Below, one piece after another: positions 32,407 through 42,550 of a stretch of DNA of 64,000 bases. The stretch's first letter is position 1. Every line of letters starts with the position of its first letter. The notes below the pieces were generated by a model that had not been told where the DNA came from, did not search any database, and was given only the letters and a program-made list of their open reading frames with translations. The stretch lies in contig NC_047081.1 of the NCBI RefSeq assembly GCF_902459465.1, positions 10,974,001-11,038,000 of the forward strand, given 5' to 3'. The position numbers and the translations under genes are program-made. Source of the DNA: Asterias rubens. Lineage: Eukaryota.

Positions 32407-35400
32407 TTAGAATCCCTGGCTGAAGCCGCCACCACTGGACCCGCCCGAGTAGAACCCACCGCTGCTGCCGCCTCCGTGGCTTCCTGAAATTAATTCAAGA
32501 AAGTTGAAAAAAATGGTTTCAATAATTTATTTGATCCTATCTATTTAATCCTATCTAAATGTAGCTGTAAACAATTAAACTATCATTTAATTTTAATGTT
32601 ACATCCAACATGTCTGACCTGTATCCTGATCTTTTTCCAAGCACAAAATTGTTAAGCAATTTTCAGTGAGTATTTTACCTTGGTATCCTGATCCCTGGTT
32701 CTCGAAGCTGGTGTATCCGCCGCCCGATCGCATCCCACCTCCCTGATTGCCGAAGCCGTTGCCTTGGCTACCAAAGCCTTGACTTCCCACCTGACTACTC
32801 TGACCTCCATAGTTTCCTGCACCACCTGAGGAAAGGTACCAGACCGTGTTATATCGTTAACTAAATAAGTATCTCTGAAATTTCCAAAGGCATTTCTTGG
32901 AAGGCCAGATGACCATTTGTTTCACCAAGACGATATTAAAAAGTCTGAATTAACCCTTTCAAGCACCATTTATGTTAGTGATAAATTGATTGTATGGACA
33001 TATTAGTAATTGTTTATTCATAGCACCATCAAGAGTCCATTTTCCCATTCTGAAAACTGTGTGGTCTTGCAATCATTTTTTCCCTTCATTTTACAACTAT
33101 TTTTCTACAGGGATTTAAACTGACTTGATTTGTAAAGATTGAAATTAATGGAGAAAGTAAAGAGGGCTGGTGAAAAAAACTGTTGACTAGCAACTGGTCA
33201 GTGCATGAAAGAGTTGAGATAAACAAATCCCTGTCGGAATCCAATAAAATTCCCCAAATCAGGAAAACATTTTGACCTGATCGAGTGCTCCACTACAGAA
33301 GGCCAACTCTTCTCCGGATATCACCCTCATTCATACTAAATTGTACTGTTCTAAAATTTATGATACATCTTGCATATAACATCATTAGTCATTAATCACT
33401 AACGTCCGTCGATGTTGGTTTTTTCCCATTATCGATATATCGAAAATTTAATATCGAGTATACTCGATATATCGACTATTTCCCGCGCGCAAGATGGAAG
33501 CCTAAAAACAGCACTTGGTATACTCATGGAGGTAGAAATATTCATACCATAGACTGACAGTTTAATAGGGTTACATTTCAACTTGTTTATGTCTGATCCC
33601 CCGAACTTTGTTTGTAGTCCAAACAATTTCAGATTGCGTAGTCCCGCCCCGATTATTTCTGGTTTTACAACAAAGTATGATCGCCGCTACCGCTGGCTTG
33701 GCCAATTGGTGAACGCTCACCACAATTCTCGATTCGTGATTGGCCATGATTGGCCGTCTCAAAATGACACAGAGCCTTTGTGAGTTGCGTGACTCGCCGA
33801 CATTAAGGTGTCAGTTGCCGATGCATTGACGTAGAAGTGTCAATCAAGTTGTCCGACGGGCGCGCGGACTACCTTTACGGTTGAAAATGGTTGAGATAAT
33901 CATCGAAAAAAAATCACTAGAAAGTCCCGCAAAACACAGACCTACCACTCAGCGATCACAATATACAACGCACGCAGCATGCAGTCACATAGTCTCCAAT
34001 AAAGGCTCGTAGTCTTTTTACTTTGCATTCTTTAACCAAGGCAAGAAACATTGAATGCTAGAACGCCCTCTATTGTCGAAATAACGCAGTGCATCACCCG
34101 ATACCGCCTTGACCAAAGACTGCATGTGTCTGCGCATGCTTGGACAAACGGGTTTCCCCCCGAATTGCAATAACCATACACGCTGGTGTGCACGCTTAAA
34201 CCGTACAACAGCATAGTCTTCGCTGGTACGCACGCAATAGCCGACAGCGTGGTCTAATTGCGAAGCATATAGTTCCTCGGAAATGTTAGCTTGTTTACTG
34301 AAAACAACACAACGTTTAGGCCTTATTTGACCAAAATGACGCCATTACGATAGAAAGATTATTGTAAGAGGGGAAGTTTTTGCGTGGTATTTTTGCAAAG
34401 TCAATAATGCTGTGATGAAGACGCATTGATTTTGATCACATGCACAATGGAAAGTTGCATCTTAAACAGCCGACAGGCTAGGGCAGCAGCGGCGGTTTCT
34501 TTTGAGGTTTTACCGTGCGCTCGCCGCGGGGTCGTGAACTTCTGCGGCGGGCCGGCGGCTGATGGCGAAAACACAAAGAACATGCAGACATACTTGCTTG
34601 TAAAACGTATTTTATTTAATAGGGCAACTCAAAATGATGAAACTAAATAACGACGACGGCTTTTCTAATACTCAAACACAGATTTCTTTTAAATTATCGG
34701 ACACTCTTTTGGTATTTTCGATATCATTTAGGAACATCGAAATTTTCAAAACATCGAAATTTTTCGATATGTATCGAAAATCCGATATTACGATATGATT
34801 ATAAAAGTGACATCGGCGATTTCGATGTCAAAAAAATATCGAGTTTTTGAGTATTTTCGATATATCGACGGACGTTATTAATCACCGACAGTTGAAAAGA
34901 AATCTTACCCCCCATGCCTCCCATACTTGGGACGTCTCCGTATCCGCCCCCATCCCCATTGTCGCCATCCTCCTCGGAGTTCAAGAAAAGCTCGATGTAG
35001 CGATGGATCATATGCTCCTTGTCCTTGCCCATGGCGGCCGTTGCATCCCGGTGACTTGTGAAGTCCACGTCGGCCTCGCCGGACGGCTGACCTTTGTTGT
35101 TGAACTTGATGACGACCCGACATGGGACAGCCTTCTTTTCAAACCACTGCCAATTTCAATTCAATATCAAAATTTATTTGTACATTATTGGTGAGAAAAA
35201 GGAGAACAATAAGCGAATATAGAACAATTTTGTTTTACTTTTTATGCTTGAATTCCCTATTCCACTGAGCTTTTGCCAAGGCATGCCTTGAATTTCATCT
35301 TTGAAAGGGCAAGACATTTTCATTGCAAAGGGCACTTCTTCCATTGGAAAATCTGTAAGTCTATGTGAAACTTCTGAAGGGGAACTAAAGCCAAGACCAG

Positions 35401-38400
35401 GAGCAGCAGAGGCCATGGCCTCTACATAACTACAAGCCTGCTATAATCAGGCATGATTTTTGGTCCTTCACAAAAAAGTAGCAACATTTTATCAAGTATA
35501 AGGGCTGACCTACATGTTCCCACCCAATAGGCTTCTAAAGACTTTTCATCAGGCTGGTTAATCCCAATTTTTCTGATTTTATCCAAGGGCACAACAATTT
35601 GAAAAAGAATGTCATGCCTGCTATAGTAATGGTATCATAGGCGATAAAACGATAAAGAAAAGTTGCATCGTCCCTGTTGGATTCACTTACCTCCATGATG
35701 TGTTCCTCGGTAGCGCTGTACGGCAGACCTCTCATATGCACAGAGTGCCCTGTGCTGCTGACGAATCCTGGGGACATGCTGTCACCCCCGGGACCCCCGA
35801 AGCCACCTCCGTAACTCCCGCCACCCCCACTGCTGCTGCTTCCACCAAATCCACTGCCACTGCTTCTCATTCCATATCCACCTGTTCGGATTGTAATCAA
35901 TTATATTTATTATGAATGGAAATTCCACAGGTTCGTTGCACAGAAATTACAAAATAGTAAGATAATAATAATAAGATATTTTTATATTAGGTTCCTAAGC
36001 GTTATGGTGATGATGTCCCATAGACTATTTAGTAAAACCAGGGCAACAGCGCCAAAATACAAAGATACAAGTTTACAAAAATAGGCCATGTCATACAATG
36101 CAATAAAATGAGAGAATAAGCCTCTCGTTGGTTGAATATATTATAACACATTATTTATAACATACTCAAAACTCTTCTTAATGAATTTATTTGTTTATTA
36201 TTAATGGAAATTTGACAGTGGTGTGTGGTTGCACATAGTTACAAAAACTAAAACTATAACTGGCCATTGAAAGCTAGTTGGCCCCGTCATACAATACTAA
36301 GAACGAAAGAATAAGCCCCTGCACAACAACCTACAAAACCACTACAGATGGCAAACTTTTCACTTGGCAATATGATTGAAATCTACAACAAAACTTAAAA
36401 CGCCTGAACAAAATCACAGACCCAATGTGCACTGATTATCGATACACTGTTCATACAAATATAATCGAAAAGCACAAAATCAAAGAACGCACAATTTGTT
36501 ATACAATCAAATTACACTTAGAAACAATAAAGGTAATATACAAGGCAAGTATAAATAATTAAGTTCATCATATAAAAGCAATTAATGGATAAGGGCTACA
36601 CATTGCATGATGAAATAGGATGAAGGTTGGGTAAAGGAACAAAAATAAAAATCCACAAATAAAACATCATTTTACTAAAGCATGTCATTACTAAACCACA
36701 TCAATTTCAACAACCCAACTAAAAAACTCCCCCATTCACTACTCCGCCCGTTCCTACTACACTCACCTCCTCCACTGCCTCGTCCTCTTGACTGCATCAT
36801 CCCGCCCCTCATGCCTCGTCCCCGTCTGTTCATCATCCCCCCTCCCATACCTCCCATGCCTCCAAAGCCTCCGTAGCTATCCATCCCATACATGTTGTCT
36901 TCGTAACCTCCACCTCCGTAGCCGCCTGTCAAACCCATAAAAAAAACAGTCTTGAGATACCTCAGACATAATAGACCCCTTGCGTTGGAGGTCATTGTTG
37001 ACTAAACATGCAAGTGTGAAAGGCAGTCATTGGCTGATAGACGTGCGCAGTGCTTACAGGCATTTCCATTGTTTATCAACAAAGATGGCAGCCAATGACG
37101 TCATGGGCAAAACATGAGGTCGTTGGGGCAATCCATGTGGTCGTTGAGGCAAAGCTTCAACTTTCTAAAGACGGTTTATATTTTCCCTTTGGACAGGACA
37201 GTTGAGGCCAGCTAAGTTCTTACTATTCTCAAGTCAGTGTTTTTTAAAAATTTTTTTACAAAAATTCAAAATAAGATCCTATCCCAAAGAAAGTCATTGG
37301 GTCGATTTCACAAAGATAGTCCTTACTTAGGACTAGTGTTAGGAGTTATTAAAAGCTTAAGATTAGTCCTTGGATAAGACTAGTCTCAACTCTTTGTGAA
37401 ATCACCCGACCTATCAACCCTCTGAGTTTATTAGCACTTCATCCTGCTATATACAGATTTCTTGCTCTCACAAGATAAAATTGAACGTCTTTCAGACAAT
37501 ACCTACCATCGAATCTGTAGCGACGTTCAAAGCCAGAGCTCCCAAGTCCCCTTCCGCCCCTCATGTTGCCCATTCCTCCTCCTCCTCCTCCTCCTCCGAA
37601 GCGATCGTATGGACCAGGTCTAGGGAAGGATCGCTTGGCAGCATTTGACGCACGTCGTACCTCCTCCACGTTACTGCGGAAGATCTCTACATATCTAGGA
37701 AAACAAAGCGGTAACGTCAAAGTTAGCGACAGAGTAACCCTTGAAGCATCTCTGATTAGAGACGCTCACTATCGCAGTTTAAAAACAAAAGAGCCAGAAT
37801 CGTGGACAATTATTCTACACTAGTCAAAAAATGTGTTTCTTTCAATGGCAATAATGTCCTTGGTCATTTCATGTAGAAAGTGCTTTCCAGTGCAAATGAT
37901 TATTTCAGTCCTTTCAAAACCCTTCCATTCAAGTTTGATTTCATAAAAACTAACAAACTTTTAAACTGCCATTCGTTAAAAGATATGGATGGTTTTTGTT
38001 TTTACAAACATGTGAACAAAAAAACAACAAAGTAACTGCTTGCGATTGTTTACAAACTTCAACAAACAAGCAGGCAGCCACCATAAAGTGACACCAATCT
38101 CATTAACCCTGAAGAGGCAAGCTACAATTAAAGTAGACCCAAAAAGGCCAAACACCTTGAACAATGGTAATGTAATTATTACTTCTTTTTGTTTGATACA
38201 GAATTCAGGACTACCGAAAAAGACAGAACAAACTTTGCAACCTTTCAAAGCTTTTTAAAACACAACAAACTGTTTGGAAAAATTGTAATGAGGCCAGAAT
38301 AAAACAGCAAATGTTTGTGGTTCAATGAAAATTATGTGGGTTTTTTAAGTGCTAGTATTGTTGATATTAAAACAGTAAATAAACATTAAGAAATGTTAAC

Positions 38401-41400
38401 ACAAACTTGTTATCTTTCAATGATCCTTTATATTGTATACCTTAAGAAAAATAACTAAAACATTTAAAAACACAAAAATACTCATGCAGCAGGCCTGGAA
38501 TTTCATCTTTTTGAGGGCAAGGCCATTTTTATTTTGCAAGGGCACTGCCGTAAGAAAATCTTAAAAGACTACGGGACACAAAGGCCAACACAAGGGCAAC
38601 AGATGCCACAGCCACTACGTATTCCAGGCCTTATGCAGTGTAGAAAGTGGAAGTTGACCAAAGGAAAACCAGTTAACAGATAGGGGAGGCCTTTAAACAA
38701 AGGACAATGGCATTGACAAGGAAAAGGACACTGACAAGGACATTGACAAACATATGACATCGCCACAGGTAAAAGAAAGGGACAAAAACCCCTTTTTGAA
38801 AAAGGACAAACATTGACACAGGATGACCACTGTGACACACAATGACAAAGAGTGACTGAAACGTGATAGCATGGACATGACAAAACAATGACACAAATGA
38901 CAACAAATGAATTGTAACCACAGAAATAACTGCCCTTTGTAGTCATCACATCATTTCAAGGTTTGTAGTTTTTCCCCACAAAGATGTTGATTGTTTTTTT
39001 TTTTGCTAAAACCAACACACATCATTTCGCTCTAAAAAATCGGAACGAACAAAAACATTCCTTTACAAAAACGTACAGACCTATTTTTCTCAAAGTCATC
39101 GGATGTTTTGCCCAGGTAGAGTATTGAACCCAATAGCAATTCATGCCATTTAAAGTGAGGTTAGAGTTTTGGAGTGTTTCCCAGAAGCATTAGGACTCTA
39201 TCTACTGGAGAAGGAGTACATCACAAAATTGAATTTGACATTTCCCTTCCTGTTTTTAAGATGCATTCAACCTTCATGCGGACACCAATCCGTCACACTT
39301 GAAAGTTTTTAGCTGATTTCAGCATACGCAAACACTTCACCAAGAAGTGATATACATCACTACGGCAACCAATAAAACCAAGTGTTAACGGATAAAAAAG
39401 CTTTAAAGGGAAATAATATGACTTGGGATAGCCTACTATTTAATTTTTTATAAAGAAAATAAATTCAACAAATTTGAAGTGAAAATAGTAACTTTTAAGG
39501 GAATTAAAAACAGCCTAAGATTATCTTTAAGCACACAAAATAATGAGAAAACAAGGGTAACGGTAGCTACCCCACCGCCCTTCCAAGCCCCACCTGTGAC
39601 CCAATTTTTGCATGTGCTTTCCCAAAGCCTGCTCTGCCAGATCCTTGGTTGCAAATTGCACAAAGGCATCCCCGGTGCACTTCCCCTCGTGGTCTTTTGG
39701 CAGGGTTACACCGTTCGCCACTATCTCCAACCCTGTCGTTTGTCAACGCCACCCCAGTACGTTGCCCGATTACCACCCGGTCAGGAACCACACCCGTTGA
39801 TAAACCCGGTCGGTTTAAGTTGATACCCAAATTGAGGGGGGACACACCATACCCGCCAGATCCACCCCGACGATTAAGAACCCAAAAGGGAAGGAGACAA
39901 AAAAAGGATAGGAGGCACAAATCAATAATGATCATAATCTGTTGGGAAAATGGCGTTAACATCAAGCACACAGGTAGTTCATATTTTTGTAAAGCAACTT
40001 ACATAACAACAAAGTTCTATCATCCCCATTATGAAGTCAAATATGCGACACACTTGGGTTTTTTTTTACAAGTAAAAACCACCAAACCAAGAATATTGGT
40101 GATGTTTTGCTCTATACTCGTCGGCCAAACTGAGATCTGTTTTTAGATCAACATACTTTTGTCCGTCGAAGAAAAGCAAGCTGTTTTTTTCTGCCCAAAC
40201 AGTTTTGAATATCTGCCTGGTGACTAGTACATGCTGGATTCTAGAATTCCATACGTTATAGCCTCGGCTGCTTTTCTGCTTTAGAAATTTACCAAATCTT
40301 GGGGCACTATGCCCGGGATCTGAGGGAAAAATGCTTGAATGTTCACACATTGCTCATCAGACACGCAACTTGTAATTGCCCCCAAAAACAGGAAACTGCC
40401 TTGGAAAATTCTCAAAATGTCCCTTCAAAATCACTTACAATGTTCAGGACCCATGGGGACCCTCAACAATGTTTTGCTTGCAACGACAACAACCAATACA
40501 ATTGTTTATTCTATATTAAAAATATTTTTTAGAACTGATCAAAATTGGGCAAAAATTCACAGTAAATGTAGCATTTCAGATTCAAATAGGAATGTACAAT
40601 TAAATACACAAAAAGTTCATTTCAATTTAATTTGTCATACATTGTATTTCATGAAGAAAAACACATATTCTGTCAAGACATAAGTTGAAATAGATAGGTA
40701 CAGAATAACGGTAATGCGATTATAGAAATTTAATTTTAATGGAGGAGCGACCGAGGTTTTACCCGTGAGGAGAGCACTTCCATCAGAAAATCATGTCTTG
40801 GGCATCCAAGGAAAGGGGGAACAATGCAACCGGCTCAAATAAAATTCAAGTCCAGTCGTAGAATTTGAGAATGTTTTTCAGAATTTTAATATGAAATGTA
40901 TTTTTCAGTATTCCAACAAAAGGTTTGAAATGGAACTCTTGTTTTTTTTCTCAATAAAAAATTCAAATGCCTATAATTAGTTTCAAAATCTACACCTTGA
41001 TATCTCTAAGGTAGGGTCATAGATTTGTCAACGTAGTGTTGATTCAAAGGCAAAACTTAAAAGGAAGGCAGCATCTCTTGCCACTGCTGTGCTTCTCACC
41101 AGTAAGTTTTTACGGATCTTAATTTTGTTTTGAGTGTTAACTAATCTAGATTCTACTTCTAGATGAGAAGTTCTTGGGGGGGGGGGGGGGGGGTTCAGTC
41201 ACAGAGGACTGTTTCTGTAATCAATCTGCCATGGCAATGAGACGTACCTTGGAAGAACTGCATAATTTCTTCTTTGGAGCATTCATAGGGTATGCCACGC
41301 ATCCTTATGCATCCTTCGTTGTCCTTAAAGGATGCTGCGCCGCTACGCCTGGTTACCCACTCCATTTCACCAATCTTAGATCGGAACACTGTATTAAGAG

Positions 41401-42550
41401 GGAGGGAGAAGGGAATAAATTGTTATAAATTACTGCCTGGGTCACTGCACGTAAGGCCTAAATGTCAGCATAAGGGGGTGTAAAGGCATGTATTGAAAAC
41501 TCCCGTTTTGAATGTAGAAACCCAGCGTCGTAACAGTGACTGTGTCTTTTTATCTTTGTGCCTGTAAGCCCATGGCAACACTTTTAGCAACAGCCACAGA
41601 ATAAGGTTACAAGGTTAACTAACAATTCACATGTACAATCTGTCACTAGTATATTGCTTATTTTTGCTTAGCAAAAACTTGCAGGCAACTTGTCTGCCGA
41701 AGCATCTCTATGAAACTGGGCCTAGGTCTTCGGAATGCTTACCTTCAACGTAGCGTTGTCCCATGTCCTTCTTGTGTTTGGTCATTGCATTCTCCATGTC
41801 CTCTTCCGTCTCAAACTCTATGAAGCATTCCCCGCTGGGACGGCCGGCTGGTGTGAATGTGAAGTGAATCCCATCTTTGCCATTCAAGATGTTGCTTTCT
41901 GCCGAGTTCAAGAATATTAAATGTTTGCCAGCATTGTCTGCAATAGAATCTTGTTTTACATTCCACCATCTTTAAAGGATTTGGGTACTTTTTGTAACAC
42001 AAAACTAGCACCTCAGCACGTAATATTTTAAGGGAAGCTTTCTTAGTCATTATCTTCAAACTGCGCAAGTTTAATGTAAATCTGTGGACATTGTTTTTTG
42101 TGTTAGAAAAAAGTACCCAGACCCTTTAAAAGCTAATGATTTTTATTTTCATTCAAAGGTTTGCATATGTATGTATCAATTTAACAAATCTGGGAAGTTT
42201 TGTGTTTATAAGTTCGAAGAAAATTAAGCAAAGATGGCAGCTTGGACTTTGCTGTGTCTACCATGTACGAATAATAATAATAATAATAAGACTTGTAATG
42301 CGCACATATCCACCCTGCTGGGTGTTCAAGGCGCAGTATGCTTCGTTTTTGAATTGGCAAGGGCACCCAGGCATTTCTCCATGGTAAAGAGCACCCTACG
42401 AGGAATATGTGCTAAAGGGTACCAAGGGGCTGGGACAAAGGCATTACCTCCGAAAAATGTTGAGATGTCCTCTTCTGTGCTGGACCAGGGAAGTCCTCTC
42501 GCTCTGACGACAAAGCCATCTTCTTCCTCTGTTCCTGGTGCGGCACTCAT
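32407..42550 (-). CDS. HNRNPH1: Heterogeneous nuclear ribonucleoprotein H/F family (three qRRMs plus Gly/Tyr/Arg-rich regions), 10 coding exons, 512 aa
   Basis: Exons 42550-42448, 41898-41743, 41388-41248, 39732-39594, 37694-37507, 36925-36767, 35881-35691, 35146-34909, 32825-32679 and 32483-32407 total 1539 nt. qRRM signatures: [80 protein letters not shown]; linker RPGPYDR. A UTR acceptor lies at 42577. Likely co-ortholog of vertebrate HNRNPF/H1/H2/H3. Confidence 0.95.
33400..34877. mobile_element. Non-autonomous hAT-like DNA transposon, 1478 bp
   Basis: Perfect 8-bp TSD TTAATCAC (33392-33399 and 34878-34885), perfect 14-bp TIR TAACGTCCGTCGAT, and many subterminal CGATAT/ATCG motifs at both ends. 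No transposase ORF. Confidence 0.88.
42270..42336 (-). mobile_element. LINE (L2-type) 3' tail fragment with (ATT)n
   Basis: 49 nt are identical to the reverse complement of 60109-60157, followed by an (ATT)n tail. Confidence 0.75.

What the first reader, a model, noticed from the sequence alone, without database searches (positions are those of the whole stretch)
39560..39890. G-run-flanked 139-nt frameshifting exon: apparent deep conservation of the hnRNP H autoregulatory switch
Seen: coding exon 4 (39732-39594) is 139 nt and ends CACAG|GTGGGG, followed by GGG and GGGG runs. Its acceptor (ggcgttgacaaacgacag) has no polypyrimidine tract and is preceded by nine GGG/GGGG runs in about 135 nt (plus-strand C-runs from 39752 to 39883), unlike the other acceptors of this gene. 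Skipping joins CAA G|AT ATG TAG, a premature stop at 37689-37687 with five junctions downstream, which is an NMD substrate. Known: hnRNP H/F qRRMs bind G-runs, and human HNRNPH1 autoregulates through skipping of the equivalent 139-nt qRRM2 exon with NMD. Inference: the feedback loop predates vertebrates and is retained here with an unusually explicit G-run architecture, possibly G-quadruplex-forming.
Basis: partly seen in the sequence, partly recalled or inferred. Interest (0 to 1): 0.72.

Follow-up and report, generated by a model that had tools for sequence, protein, structure and literature searches.

The report
G-run-wrapped frameshifting hnRNP H exon
A 139-base exon of a sea-star hnRNP H/F gene is surrounded by G-triplet motifs of the kind this protein family binds, and the same exon with the same motif layout occurs from hydrozoans to sharks, which suggests but does not prove that the self-limiting splicing switch known in the human gene dates back to early animals.

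Summary
Exon 4 (39732-39594, minus strand, 139 nt) of the only detectable hnRNP H/F gene is real. RNA contigs from four studies join it to exons 3 and 5. It encodes the second half of qRRM2.

- **G-runs:** nine lie upstream (39883-39752), four in the exon and three at or after the GUGGGG donor.
- **Not an artefact:** the upstream block is single copy, not a tandem repeat, unstructured, and has no Rfam match.
- **Skipping:** it gives ...QFFQDM-stop, with five junctions downstream.

New here:
1. The acceptor has a 204-nt AG-free zone, and its pyrimidine tract is displaced to 39915-39884. This suggests a distant branch point.
2. Between this genome and Asterias amurensis, the longest identical stretch of the whole gene (525 nt) is centred on exon 4.
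3. In seven other species (brachiopod, annelid, two hydrozoans, shark, sawfly, spider) the exon is also 139 nt. GGG precedes the acceptor in 7/7, against 3/50 other acceptors. The donor is GTGGG in 6/7, against 0/50. Glycine codons in the exon are GGG in 72% of cases, against 13% elsewhere.

Not shown: no exon 3-5 joint appeared in the contigs, and protein binding was not tested. G-quadruplex potential is weak. The ancient cis-architecture is well supported. The feedback loop remains inferred.

The parts
32407..42550 (-). Coding part of the hnRNP H/F ortholog: 10 coding exons, 512 aa, three qRRM domains.
   Evidence: The exon map was transferred from the exact spliced model of A. amurensis protein P0154. 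The window CDS is open and all introns are GT-AG. Exons 1-5 are confirmed by RNA contigs. Three RRM_1 hits in Pfam. Colinear with annelid, tick and hydrozoan proteins.
41248..41388 (-). Exon 3 (141 nt), the first half of qRRM2. It ends CAA G in phase 1.
   Evidence: Joints 41743>41388 and 41248>39732 in four runs.
41176..41193 (-). C18 homopolymer 55 nt into intron 3, the same intron that ends in the G-run block. Its role is unknown.
   Evidence: It is C11 at the same place in A. amurensis.
39448..39972 (-). A 525-nt island with no difference from A. amurensis. It is the longest such stretch in the gene and is centred on exon 4.
   Evidence: The rest of intron 3 differs at 7.5 per 100 and the rest of intron 4 at 3.4 per 100.
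39735..39938 (-). AG-exclusion zone of 204 nt upstream of the exon 4 acceptor.
   Evidence: The other acceptors of the gene have 23-111 nt, and 0 of 20000 shuffles reach 204. In 190 kb of background, 1 of 21511 AG-free gaps is 200 nt or longer.
39884..39915 (-). Displaced polypyrimidine tract (80-90% C/T) at about -150 to -185, preceded by a TTGAT branch-point-like motif.
   Evidence: The branch point itself was not mapped.
39752..39883 (-). Upstream block of nine G3-4 runs, mostly YGGGU, between the displaced tract and the acceptor AG.
   Evidence: Single copy. No tandem repeat. Folds no better than shuffles, z = +1.37. No Rfam match. Zero substitutions against A. amurensis.
39594..39732 (-). 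Exon 4, 139 nt, the second half of qRRM2. It holds four exonic G-runs.
   Evidence: Aligns without gaps to human hnRNP H and F qRRM2 chains, E = 1.7e-18 and 3.1e-16. The exonic G-run positions are shared across phyla.
39570..39593 (-). Donor GUGGGG followed by GGG and GGGG. With the last exonic GGG it forms the only G4-like motif of the locus (39602-39570).
   Evidence: The donor is GTGGG in 7 of 8 species, against 0 of 58 other donors.
37507..37694 (-). Exon 5. When exon 4 is skipped, the TAG at 37689-37687 is in frame.
   Evidence: Five exon junctions lie downstream and the stop is 912 nt before the last junction in the A. amurensis model.

Best explanation
Exon 4 is the sea-star ortholog of the 139-nt cassette exon through which vertebrate HNRNPH1 and HNRNPH3 limit their own expression. 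The exon has a deliberately poor context. Its donor is GUGGGG. Its acceptor AG is separated from its polypyrimidine tract, and probably from its branch point, by about 150 nt. About sixteen G-runs surround it within 330 nt.

The gene's own product is the only hnRNP H/F-type protein detected in this genome. When abundant, it is proposed to occupy these G-runs and hinder recognition of both splice sites, so that exon 3 is joined to exon 5. That shifts the frame, places a stop two codons after the junction, and sends the mRNA to nonsense-mediated decay. The result is a negative feedback on protein level.

Shown here:
- gene identity
- exon structure and its inclusion in RNA
- the G-run, AG-free-zone and pyrimidine-tract anatomy
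- purifying selection on the flanks
- conservation of the exon and its G-run code across at least five phyla

Inferred:
- that skipping occurs
- that the protein binds these runs
- that binding represses inclusion
- that the skipped mRNA is degraded
For: Identity and homology:
-.
- The exon is 139 nt with the same boundaries (AG|GGTTG...CACAG|GT) in Asterias, Lingula, Capitella, Hydractinia, Hydra, Stegostoma, Cephus and Trichonephila.
- The same boundaries also occur in four metagenome contigs.

Motif conservation, leaving Asterias out:

| Feature | 139-nt exon | Other sites of the same genes | p |
|---|---|---|---|
| GGG in the last 50 nt of the upstream intron | 7/7 | 3/50 | 4.5e-7 |
| GGGT within 28 nt of the acceptor | 7/7 | 1/50 | 3e-8 |
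| GGG in the first 50 nt downstream | 6/7 | 3/50 | 1.5e-5 |
| Donor GTGGG | 6/7 | 0/50 | 1.9e-7 |
| Weak AAG acceptor | 4/7 | 2/50 | 1.2e-3 |
| Glycine codons that are GGG | 23/32 | 23/171 (non-glycine-rich rest) | 5.5e-11 |

Selection within sea stars:
- The 525-nt identical island is centred on the exon.
- The G-run block has 0 substitutions where about 12 are expected.

Consequence of skipping:
- A premature stop arises in all 8 species, with 3-6 junctions downstream.

Literature:
- Human and mouse HNRPH1 exon 5 and HNRPH3 exon 3 carry a conserved 5' splice-site GGGG, are skipped, and shift the frame (PMC1079783).
- HNRNPH1 binds near this exon. Poly-G mutations raise inclusion, and the skipped form is NMD-sensitive (10.1101/686956; PMC13001508).
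Against: - No exon 3-5 joint was listed in four RNA-type runs. Only the inclusion junctions were seen. The runs were Logan contigs, their 'RNA' label is a guess, and six joints were not shown.
- The exonic UAGG that accompanies the GGGG in mammals is absent from the Asterias exon.
- G-runs near splice sites can also enhance splicing. In the GRIN1 exon studied in PMC1079783, hnRNP H was proposed to buffer against silencing by hnRNP A1. The sign of the effect therefore cannot be read from the sequence.
- Capitella lacks the GTGGG donor.
Confidence: 0.55

Rival explanations
1. The G-runs are splicing enhancers, not silencers. They compensate for intrinsically weak splice sites so that an essential exon is always included. 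This could work through hnRNP H/F itself, giving positive or neutral feedback, or through another factor. There would be no regulated skipping.
For: Only exon-included junctions were seen in four runs. G triplets close to splice sites are classical intronic enhancers (established knowledge, not tested here). In PMC1079783, hnRNP H was proposed to buffer against hnRNP A1-mediated silencing at a GGGG donor.
Against: In human HNRNPH1, mutation of these poly-G motifs increases inclusion. Keeping weak sites (GTGGG donor, AAG acceptors, G-runs inside the pyrimidine-tract region) for hundreds of millions of years in an essential domain exon is hard to explain without regulation. A frameshifting length and an early in-frame stop are kept in all 8 species.
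Confidence: 0.25
2. The conserved G-rich island serves something other than hnRNP H/F-dependent splicing. Candidates are binding by another G-run or G4-binding protein, a DNA-level element (enhancer, R-loop or G4 on the non-template strand), or a pausing site for RNA polymerase that affects exon definition.
For: The identical island (525 nt) is wider than the G-run block. A G4-like motif overlaps the donor. A C18 tract lies in the same intron.
Against: The conserved features are strand-specific and tied to the splice sites and to synonymous codon positions of the exon. The upstream runs fit no G4 motif and the G4 is not part of the best fold. There is no Rfam family and no excess structure.
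Confidence: 0.1
3. The Asterias nine-run block is a chance or neutral expansion of G-rich sequence, with no function beyond the one or two acceptor-proximal GGG seen in other phyla.
For: Other species have only 1-3 GGG in the last 50 nt. G-run clusters of 8 or more occur about three times in 380 kb of strand elsewhere in the genome.
Against: There are zero substitutions in 158 nt against A. amurensis, where the rest of the intron has 7.5 per 100. AG dinucleotides are absent over 204 nt, which 0 of 20000 shuffles reach. The block is not repetitive.
Confidence: 0.08

Closest known systems
Human/mouse HNRNPH1 exon 4 (exon 5 in older numbering) and HNRNPH3 exon 3: autoregulatory skipping coupled to NMD
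   Same: Orthologous gene. Same exon (second half of qRRM2, same phases; 139 nt in the shark H1-like gene and in the H3-like contig). GGGG in the donor. Poly-G motifs in both flanking introns and in the exon. Skipping shifts the frame to an early stop.
   Different: The Asterias exon lacks the exonic UAGG. It has a much larger upstream array (nine runs) inside a 204-nt AG-free zone with a displaced pyrimidine tract. Skipping, NMD sensitivity and binding are demonstrated in mammals but not here.
C. elegans hrpf-1 (hnRNP F/H ortholog) exon 5 skipping with NMD (PMC2265522)
   Same: An invertebrate hnRNP F/H gene whose cassette-exon skipping gives a premature stop and an NMD substrate. It is developmentally regulated and conserved in C. 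briggsae.
   Different: The skipped product keeps two of the three RRMs, so this is a later exon and not the qRRM2 exon. No G-run code or autoregulation was reported there.
PTBP1 exon 11 and other hnRNP/SR autoregulatory AS-NMD switches
   Same: A splicing regulator binds its own pre-mRNA around one exon and drives an unproductive, NMD-targeted isoform (cited within PMC1079783). PTB-regulated exons typically have distant branch points with repressor sites between the branch point and the AG (my knowledge, not tested here).
   Different: A different protein family and motif (pyrimidine tracts against G-runs). For most such switches, the specific event has not been traced beyond vertebrates.

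Membership tests
hnRNP H/F autoregulatory 139-nt cassette (HNRNPH1/H3 type) | The host gene is an hnRNP H/F family member with three quasi-RRMs. | tested here: met
   PDB matches to hnRNP H, H2 and F qRRM2. Colinear alignment with named hnRNP H/F proteins. Three RRM_1 stretches. The only other weak genomic match is an ESRP-like gene.
hnRNP H/F autoregulatory 139-nt cassette (HNRNPH1/H3 type) | The exon encodes the second half of qRRM2, has conserved boundaries, and its length is not divisible by 3. | tested here: met
   139 nt with AG|GGTTG...CACAG|GT in the window and in 8 of 8 modelled species, including a shark H1-like gene.
hnRNP H/F autoregulatory 139-nt cassette (HNRNPH1/H3 type) | [quoted passage not shown] 2005). 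| tested here: met
   The donor is CAG|GTGGGG. The motif is described in PMC1079783.
hnRNP H/F autoregulatory 139-nt cassette (HNRNPH1/H3 type) | Exonic UAGG motif accompanying the GGGG (Han et al. 2005). | tested here: not met
   There is no TAGG in 39732-39594. It is present as ATAGGGCAC in Lingula, the shark and the metagenome contigs.
hnRNP H/F autoregulatory 139-nt cassette (HNRNPH1/H3 type) | Poly-G motifs in both flanking introns close to the exon. | tested here: met
   Nine upstream and three downstream. Enrichment over the other introns holds across species.
hnRNP H/F autoregulatory 139-nt cassette (HNRNPH1/H3 type) | Skipping creates a premature stop upstream of exon junctions. | tested here: met
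   The TAG at 37689-37687 lies two codons after the junction, with five junctions downstream.
hnRNP H/F autoregulatory 139-nt cassette (HNRNPH1/H3 type) | A skipped isoform exists and is stabilised when NMD is blocked. | tested here: inconclusive
   No 41248>37694 joint was listed among the contigs of four runs. Contigs drop rare variants, and no raw reads or NMD-inhibited samples were available.
hnRNP H/F autoregulatory 139-nt cassette (HNRNPH1/H3 type) | The protein binds these G-runs and lowers inclusion of its own exon. | not testable with these tools
   This needs CLIP or EMSA, plus knock-down or overexpression.
Exons with distant branch points (long AG-exclusion zone) | An AG-free zone far longer than usual, with the pyrimidine tract at its upstream end. 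| tested here: met
   204 nt, against 23-111 nt for the other acceptors. The tract is at 39915-39884.
Exons with distant branch points (long AG-exclusion zone) | An experimentally mapped branch point more than 100 nt upstream. | not testable with these tools
   Candidates are TTGAT at about -187, TTAAT at about -137, and a proximal CTGAC at about -48. These were read from the sequence, and none has been mapped.
RNA G-quadruplex | Four G3+ runs with short loops (7 nt or less). | tested here: not met
   The upstream block has loops of 8-22 nt. The donor motif at 39602-39570 needs one 8-nt loop, and no three-layer G4 appears in the minimum-energy fold.

The most novel reading that the evidence does not exclude
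The hnRNP H/F self-limiting switch is a single homologous event that has been kept since before cnidarians and bilaterians split. It consists of a 139-nt frameshifting qRRM2 exon with a GUGGG donor, GGGU next to a weak acceptor, and G-runs held at synonymous glycine positions. That would make it one of the oldest autoregulatory splicing-NMD circuits whose intronic cis-code is still recognisable. Sea stars would have elaborated it into a nine-run array placed between a distant branch point and the acceptor.
Probability: 0.45. Interest if true: 0.8.

Novelty: new member of a known kind. Interest (0 to 1): 0.62.

Why it matters
Autoregulation of splicing factors by unproductive splicing is common. 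For most factors, however, the specific event can be followed only within vertebrates, and conservation across kingdoms has been attributed to repeated reinvention.

Here one exon keeps its length, phase, unusual donor, weak acceptor and G-run code, including synonymous sites and intron bases, in echinoderms, brachiopods, annelids, arthropods, chordates and hydrozoans. If the switch works as it does in humans, three things follow:
- It gives a rare case of intronic regulatory sequence traceable across roughly the whole of eumetazoan history.
- It offers simple invertebrate models (sea star or Hydra embryos) for a loop whose disruption is linked to lymphoma and whose paralog is involved in neurodevelopmental disease.
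- The Asterias layout, with G-runs filling the space between a displaced pyrimidine tract and the AG, is a clean natural test bed for how hnRNP H/F blocks a 3' splice site.

Tried and rejected
1. My error: the single search of protein representatives was sent with window:39594-39731, one base out of frame. It returned only a wrong-frame ORF (P0001, from a marine metagenome scaffold 99.7% identical to the window) and an unrelated repeat protein. It gave no information on homologs.
2. The search for homologous proteins with the 71-aa stop-free stretch around exon 4 found no candidates, because of the length filter.
An alignment of the gene's three qRRM halves worked.
4. Alignment A3 stacked the paralogous RRM fragments and was discarded. 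A4 was used instead.
5. Genomic loci could not be had for Owenia (withheld), Limulus or Callorhinchus (isoform not on record). No sea urchin, hemichordate, amphioxus or mollusc ortholog was among the 120 listed hits, so those lineages are untested.
The background therefore rests on 190 kb.
7. The idea that the G-run block is a transposon, a minisatellite or a structured or known RNA was rejected.
8. The conserved, highly covered stretch at 39140-39260 was rejected as a hidden RNA gene. It is a dispersed repeat with at least 40 genomic copies.
9. Four literature searches for a prior report of invertebrate or cnidarian conservation of this exon's G-run code found none in the held library. This is not proof that none exists.
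10. No exon 3-5 joint was seen in the contigs. This is no verdict either way.
Full report
**What is there**

On the minus strand, the window carries a 10-exon gene (CDS 42550-32407, 512 aa). All its introns are GT-AG. I obtained the exon map in two steps. First I built an exact spliced model of the NCBI protein 'heterogeneous nuclear ribonucleoprotein F-like [Asterias amurensis]' (P0154) on its own locus (L010). Then I transferred that model by alignment.

The window differs from that locus by 3-10 substitutions per 100 in introns. So it comes from a close relative, a sea star of or near the genus Asterias. The genome is 417.6 Mb.

- The protein has three RRM-type domains.
- It is colinear with annelid, tick and hydrozoan hnRNP H/F proteins.
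- A six-frame search of the whole genome with the exon 4 peptide finds only this gene and a weak ESRP-like match with a different exon structure. This is therefore the only detectable H/F-type gene.

**The observation**

Exon 4 is 39732-39594, 139 nt. It encodes LEIVANG...KLGH(R), which aligns without gaps to qRRM2 of human hnRNP H (E = 1.7e-18) and hnRNP F (E = 3.1e-16).

Contigs of four runs from four studies carry the joints of exons 1-2, 2-3, 3-4 (41248>39732) and 4-5 (39594>37694).

- The donor is CAG|GTGGGG, followed by GGG and GGGG.
- The acceptor ...acgacag| has only 30-35% pyrimidines in its last 20 nt.
- Nine G3-4 runs precede it between 39883 and 39752.
- Shuffles of the same 158 nt reach nine runs once in 5000.
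- It is the densest non-coding G-run window of the 64 kb on either strand.
- In 190 kb from 19 other chromosomes, only 0.24% of 150-nt windows hold eight or more runs. Those come from three loci, mostly low-complexity or tandem-repeat sequence.

The block is single copy and not a tandem repeat. It folds no better than shuffled sequence (z = +1.37) and matches no Rfam family.

Skipping exon 4 reads ...QFFQ-D-M-stop (TAG 37689-37687). That gives a 135-aa product with five junctions downstream.

1. The 'missing' polypyrimidine tract is displaced, not absent.
   - A 32-nt tract of 80-90% C/T lies at 39915-39884.
   - From the AG at 39940-39939 down to the acceptor there is no AG dinucleotide for 204 nt.
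   - The other acceptors of the gene have 23-111 nt, and none of 20000 composition-matched shuffles reaches 204.
   - In the background sample, one AG-free gap in 21511 is that long.
   - A long AG-free zone headed by a pyrimidine tract is the signature of a distant branch point (my knowledge). The G-run array would then sit between the branch point and tract on one side and the AG on the other. A proximal CTGAC at about -48 is an alternative, and the branch point is unmapped.
2. Between the window and A. amurensis, the longest stretch without any difference in the whole gene is 525 nt (39448-39972), centred on exon 4.
   - It covers 240 nt of upstream intron and 146 nt of downstream intron.
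   - The G-run block has 0 substitutions where the rest of intron 3 has 7.5 per 100.
3. The exon itself holds four G-runs.

**Related sequences**

A scan of metagenome contigs gave four genomic contigs with the orthologous exon. It also gave one spliced hydrozoan-like transcript, whose ORF let me pass the length filter of the protein search.

From the named hits I fetched genomic loci and built exact spliced models for eight species:
- Asterias amurensis (sea star)
- Lingula (brachiopod)
- Capitella (annelid)
- Hydractinia and Hydra (hydrozoans)
- Stegostoma (shark, H1-like gene)
- Cephus (sawfly)
- Trichonephila (spider)

All eight have a 139-nt exon at the same place, with the same boundaries (AG|GGTTG...CACAG|GT).

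The hypothesis arose in the Asterias lineage, so I left it out of the test. The other seven species give the following, compared with the other introns and exons of the same genes:

| Feature | 139-nt exon | Other sites | p |
|---|---|---|---|
| GGG in the last 50 nt of the upstream intron | 7/7 | 3/50 | 4.5e-7 |
| GGGT within 28 nt of the acceptor | 7/7 | 1/50 | 3e-8 |
| GGG in the first 50 nt downstream | 6/7 | 3/50 | 1.5e-5 |
| Donor GTGGG | 6/7 | 0/50 | 1.9e-7 |
| Poor AAG acceptor | 4/7 | 2/50 | 1.2e-3 |
| Glycine codons that are GGG | 23/32 | 23/171 (outside glycine-rich regions) | 5.5e-11 |

- Capitella is the one exception for the GTGGG donor.
- The exonic G-runs fall at the same four positions of the exon across species.
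- The AG-free zone of this acceptor is longer than the gene median in every species (54-204 nt against a median of 35).
- Skipping gives a premature stop in all eight species, with 3-6 junctions downstream. In five species the stop lies two codons after the junction.

So the exon, its unusual splice sites and its G-run code are shared by cnidarians and bilaterians. The nine-run array and the displaced tract are an elaboration seen so far only in Asterias.

**What is known**

- Han et al. 2005 (PMC1079783) found that human and mouse HNRPH1 exon 5 and HNRPH3 exon 3 carry a conserved exonic UAGG and a 5' splice-site GGGG. The exons are skipped in tissues and shift the frame to a premature stop. 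The authors proposed autoregulation.
- Pararajalingam et al. (10.1101/686956) showed four things about HNRNPH1. It binds near this exon, which they number exon 4. Lymphoma mutations in the flanking and exonic poly-G motifs raise inclusion. The skipped form accumulates under cycloheximide. A negative feedback model fits these data.
- A 2026 preprint confirms the NMD sensitivity (PMC13001508).
- In C. elegans, the ortholog hrpf-1 has an NMD-coupled cassette exon. It lies after the second RRM, so it is a different exon (PMC2265522).
- I found no report of conservation of the qRRM2-exon G-run code outside vertebrates in the held library.

**How it most likely works**

The exon is kept hard to recognise and is coated with binding sites for the gene's own product. 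High protein level would favour exon 3-5 joining, a frameshift and decay.

- The steps shown are the anatomy, the RNA inclusion junctions, the selection on the flanks and the cross-phylum conservation.
- The steps inferred are the existence of the skipped isoform in sea stars, the binding, its repressive sign, and NMD.
- No exon 3-5 joint was listed. However, all four runs were assembled contigs of guessed RNA type, which lose minor isoforms, and six joints were not displayed. This is no verdict.
- The main rival is that the G-runs act as enhancers that secure constitutive inclusion of a weak exon.
- The Asterias exon also lacks the UAGG half of the mammalian motif pair.
- G-quadruplex formation is poorly supported. 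The upstream runs are too far apart, and the one G4-like motif across the donor (39602-39570) is not favoured in the predicted fold.

**Verdict**

The claim that the architecture predates vertebrates is well supported and understated, since the architecture reaches hydrozoans. The claim of a working feedback loop in the sea star remains an inference, which I hold at about 0.55.

It is a new member of a known kind of switch. Its comparative dimension appears to be unreported.

Noticed in passing
window 41176-41193 (minus strand, intron 3): A C18 homopolymer lies 55 nt downstream of the exon 3 donor, in the same intron that ends with the nine G-runs. It is C11 at the same place in A. amurensis. 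It is the only C-run of 7 or more in the gene. It might bind poly-C-binding proteins or pair with the G-runs. This was not examined.
   Followed up: partly
window 39140-39260 (intron 4): A dispersed repeat of about 110 nt with at least 40 copies at 73-92% identity across the genome. It explains the very high RNA-contig depth in the 39140-39313 bin. It sits inside a 270-nt stretch (39146-39415) that is identical in A. amurensis.
   Followed up: yes
window 41924-42445 (intron 1) and 38444-38617 (intron 4): Contig depth in the thousands, with many loose ends and strand-switch joints in all four runs. These are probably high-copy repeats or transposon fragments that are transcribed elsewhere.
   Followed up: no
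exon 5 start, window 37694-37687, and the same place in L011, L012, L013, L017: In 5 of 8 species, the first codons of the next exon (Tyr, Val/Ile-xTA, Glu-GAx) place a TAG in the shifted frame exactly two codons after the skip junction. This may be a conserved hidden stop, or chance.
   Followed up: partly
L014 8534-8558, L016 9712-9736, L017 5692-5716, L007 about 1640-1670: Shark, Hydra, spider and an H3-like vertebrate contig share an almost identical weak acceptor, TTGGGTT(G/A)AAG|GGTTGGA. This is intron sequence that is recognisable between cnidarians and vertebrates.
   Followed up: partly
G000:C4:4347745-4347855 (L003): An ESRP-like gene is the only other genomic match to the exon 4 peptide. 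Its RRM half is not split at the same place and runs on through RYIEIFRS within one exon.
   Followed up: partly
L004 (ENA metagenome scaffold, 1069 nt): A marine metagenome scaffold is 99.7% identical to window 38897-39966. A prokaryote-style gene call on it produced a spurious 92-aa 'protein' (P0001), which reads the G-run block and exon 4 in the wrong frame.
   Followed up: yes
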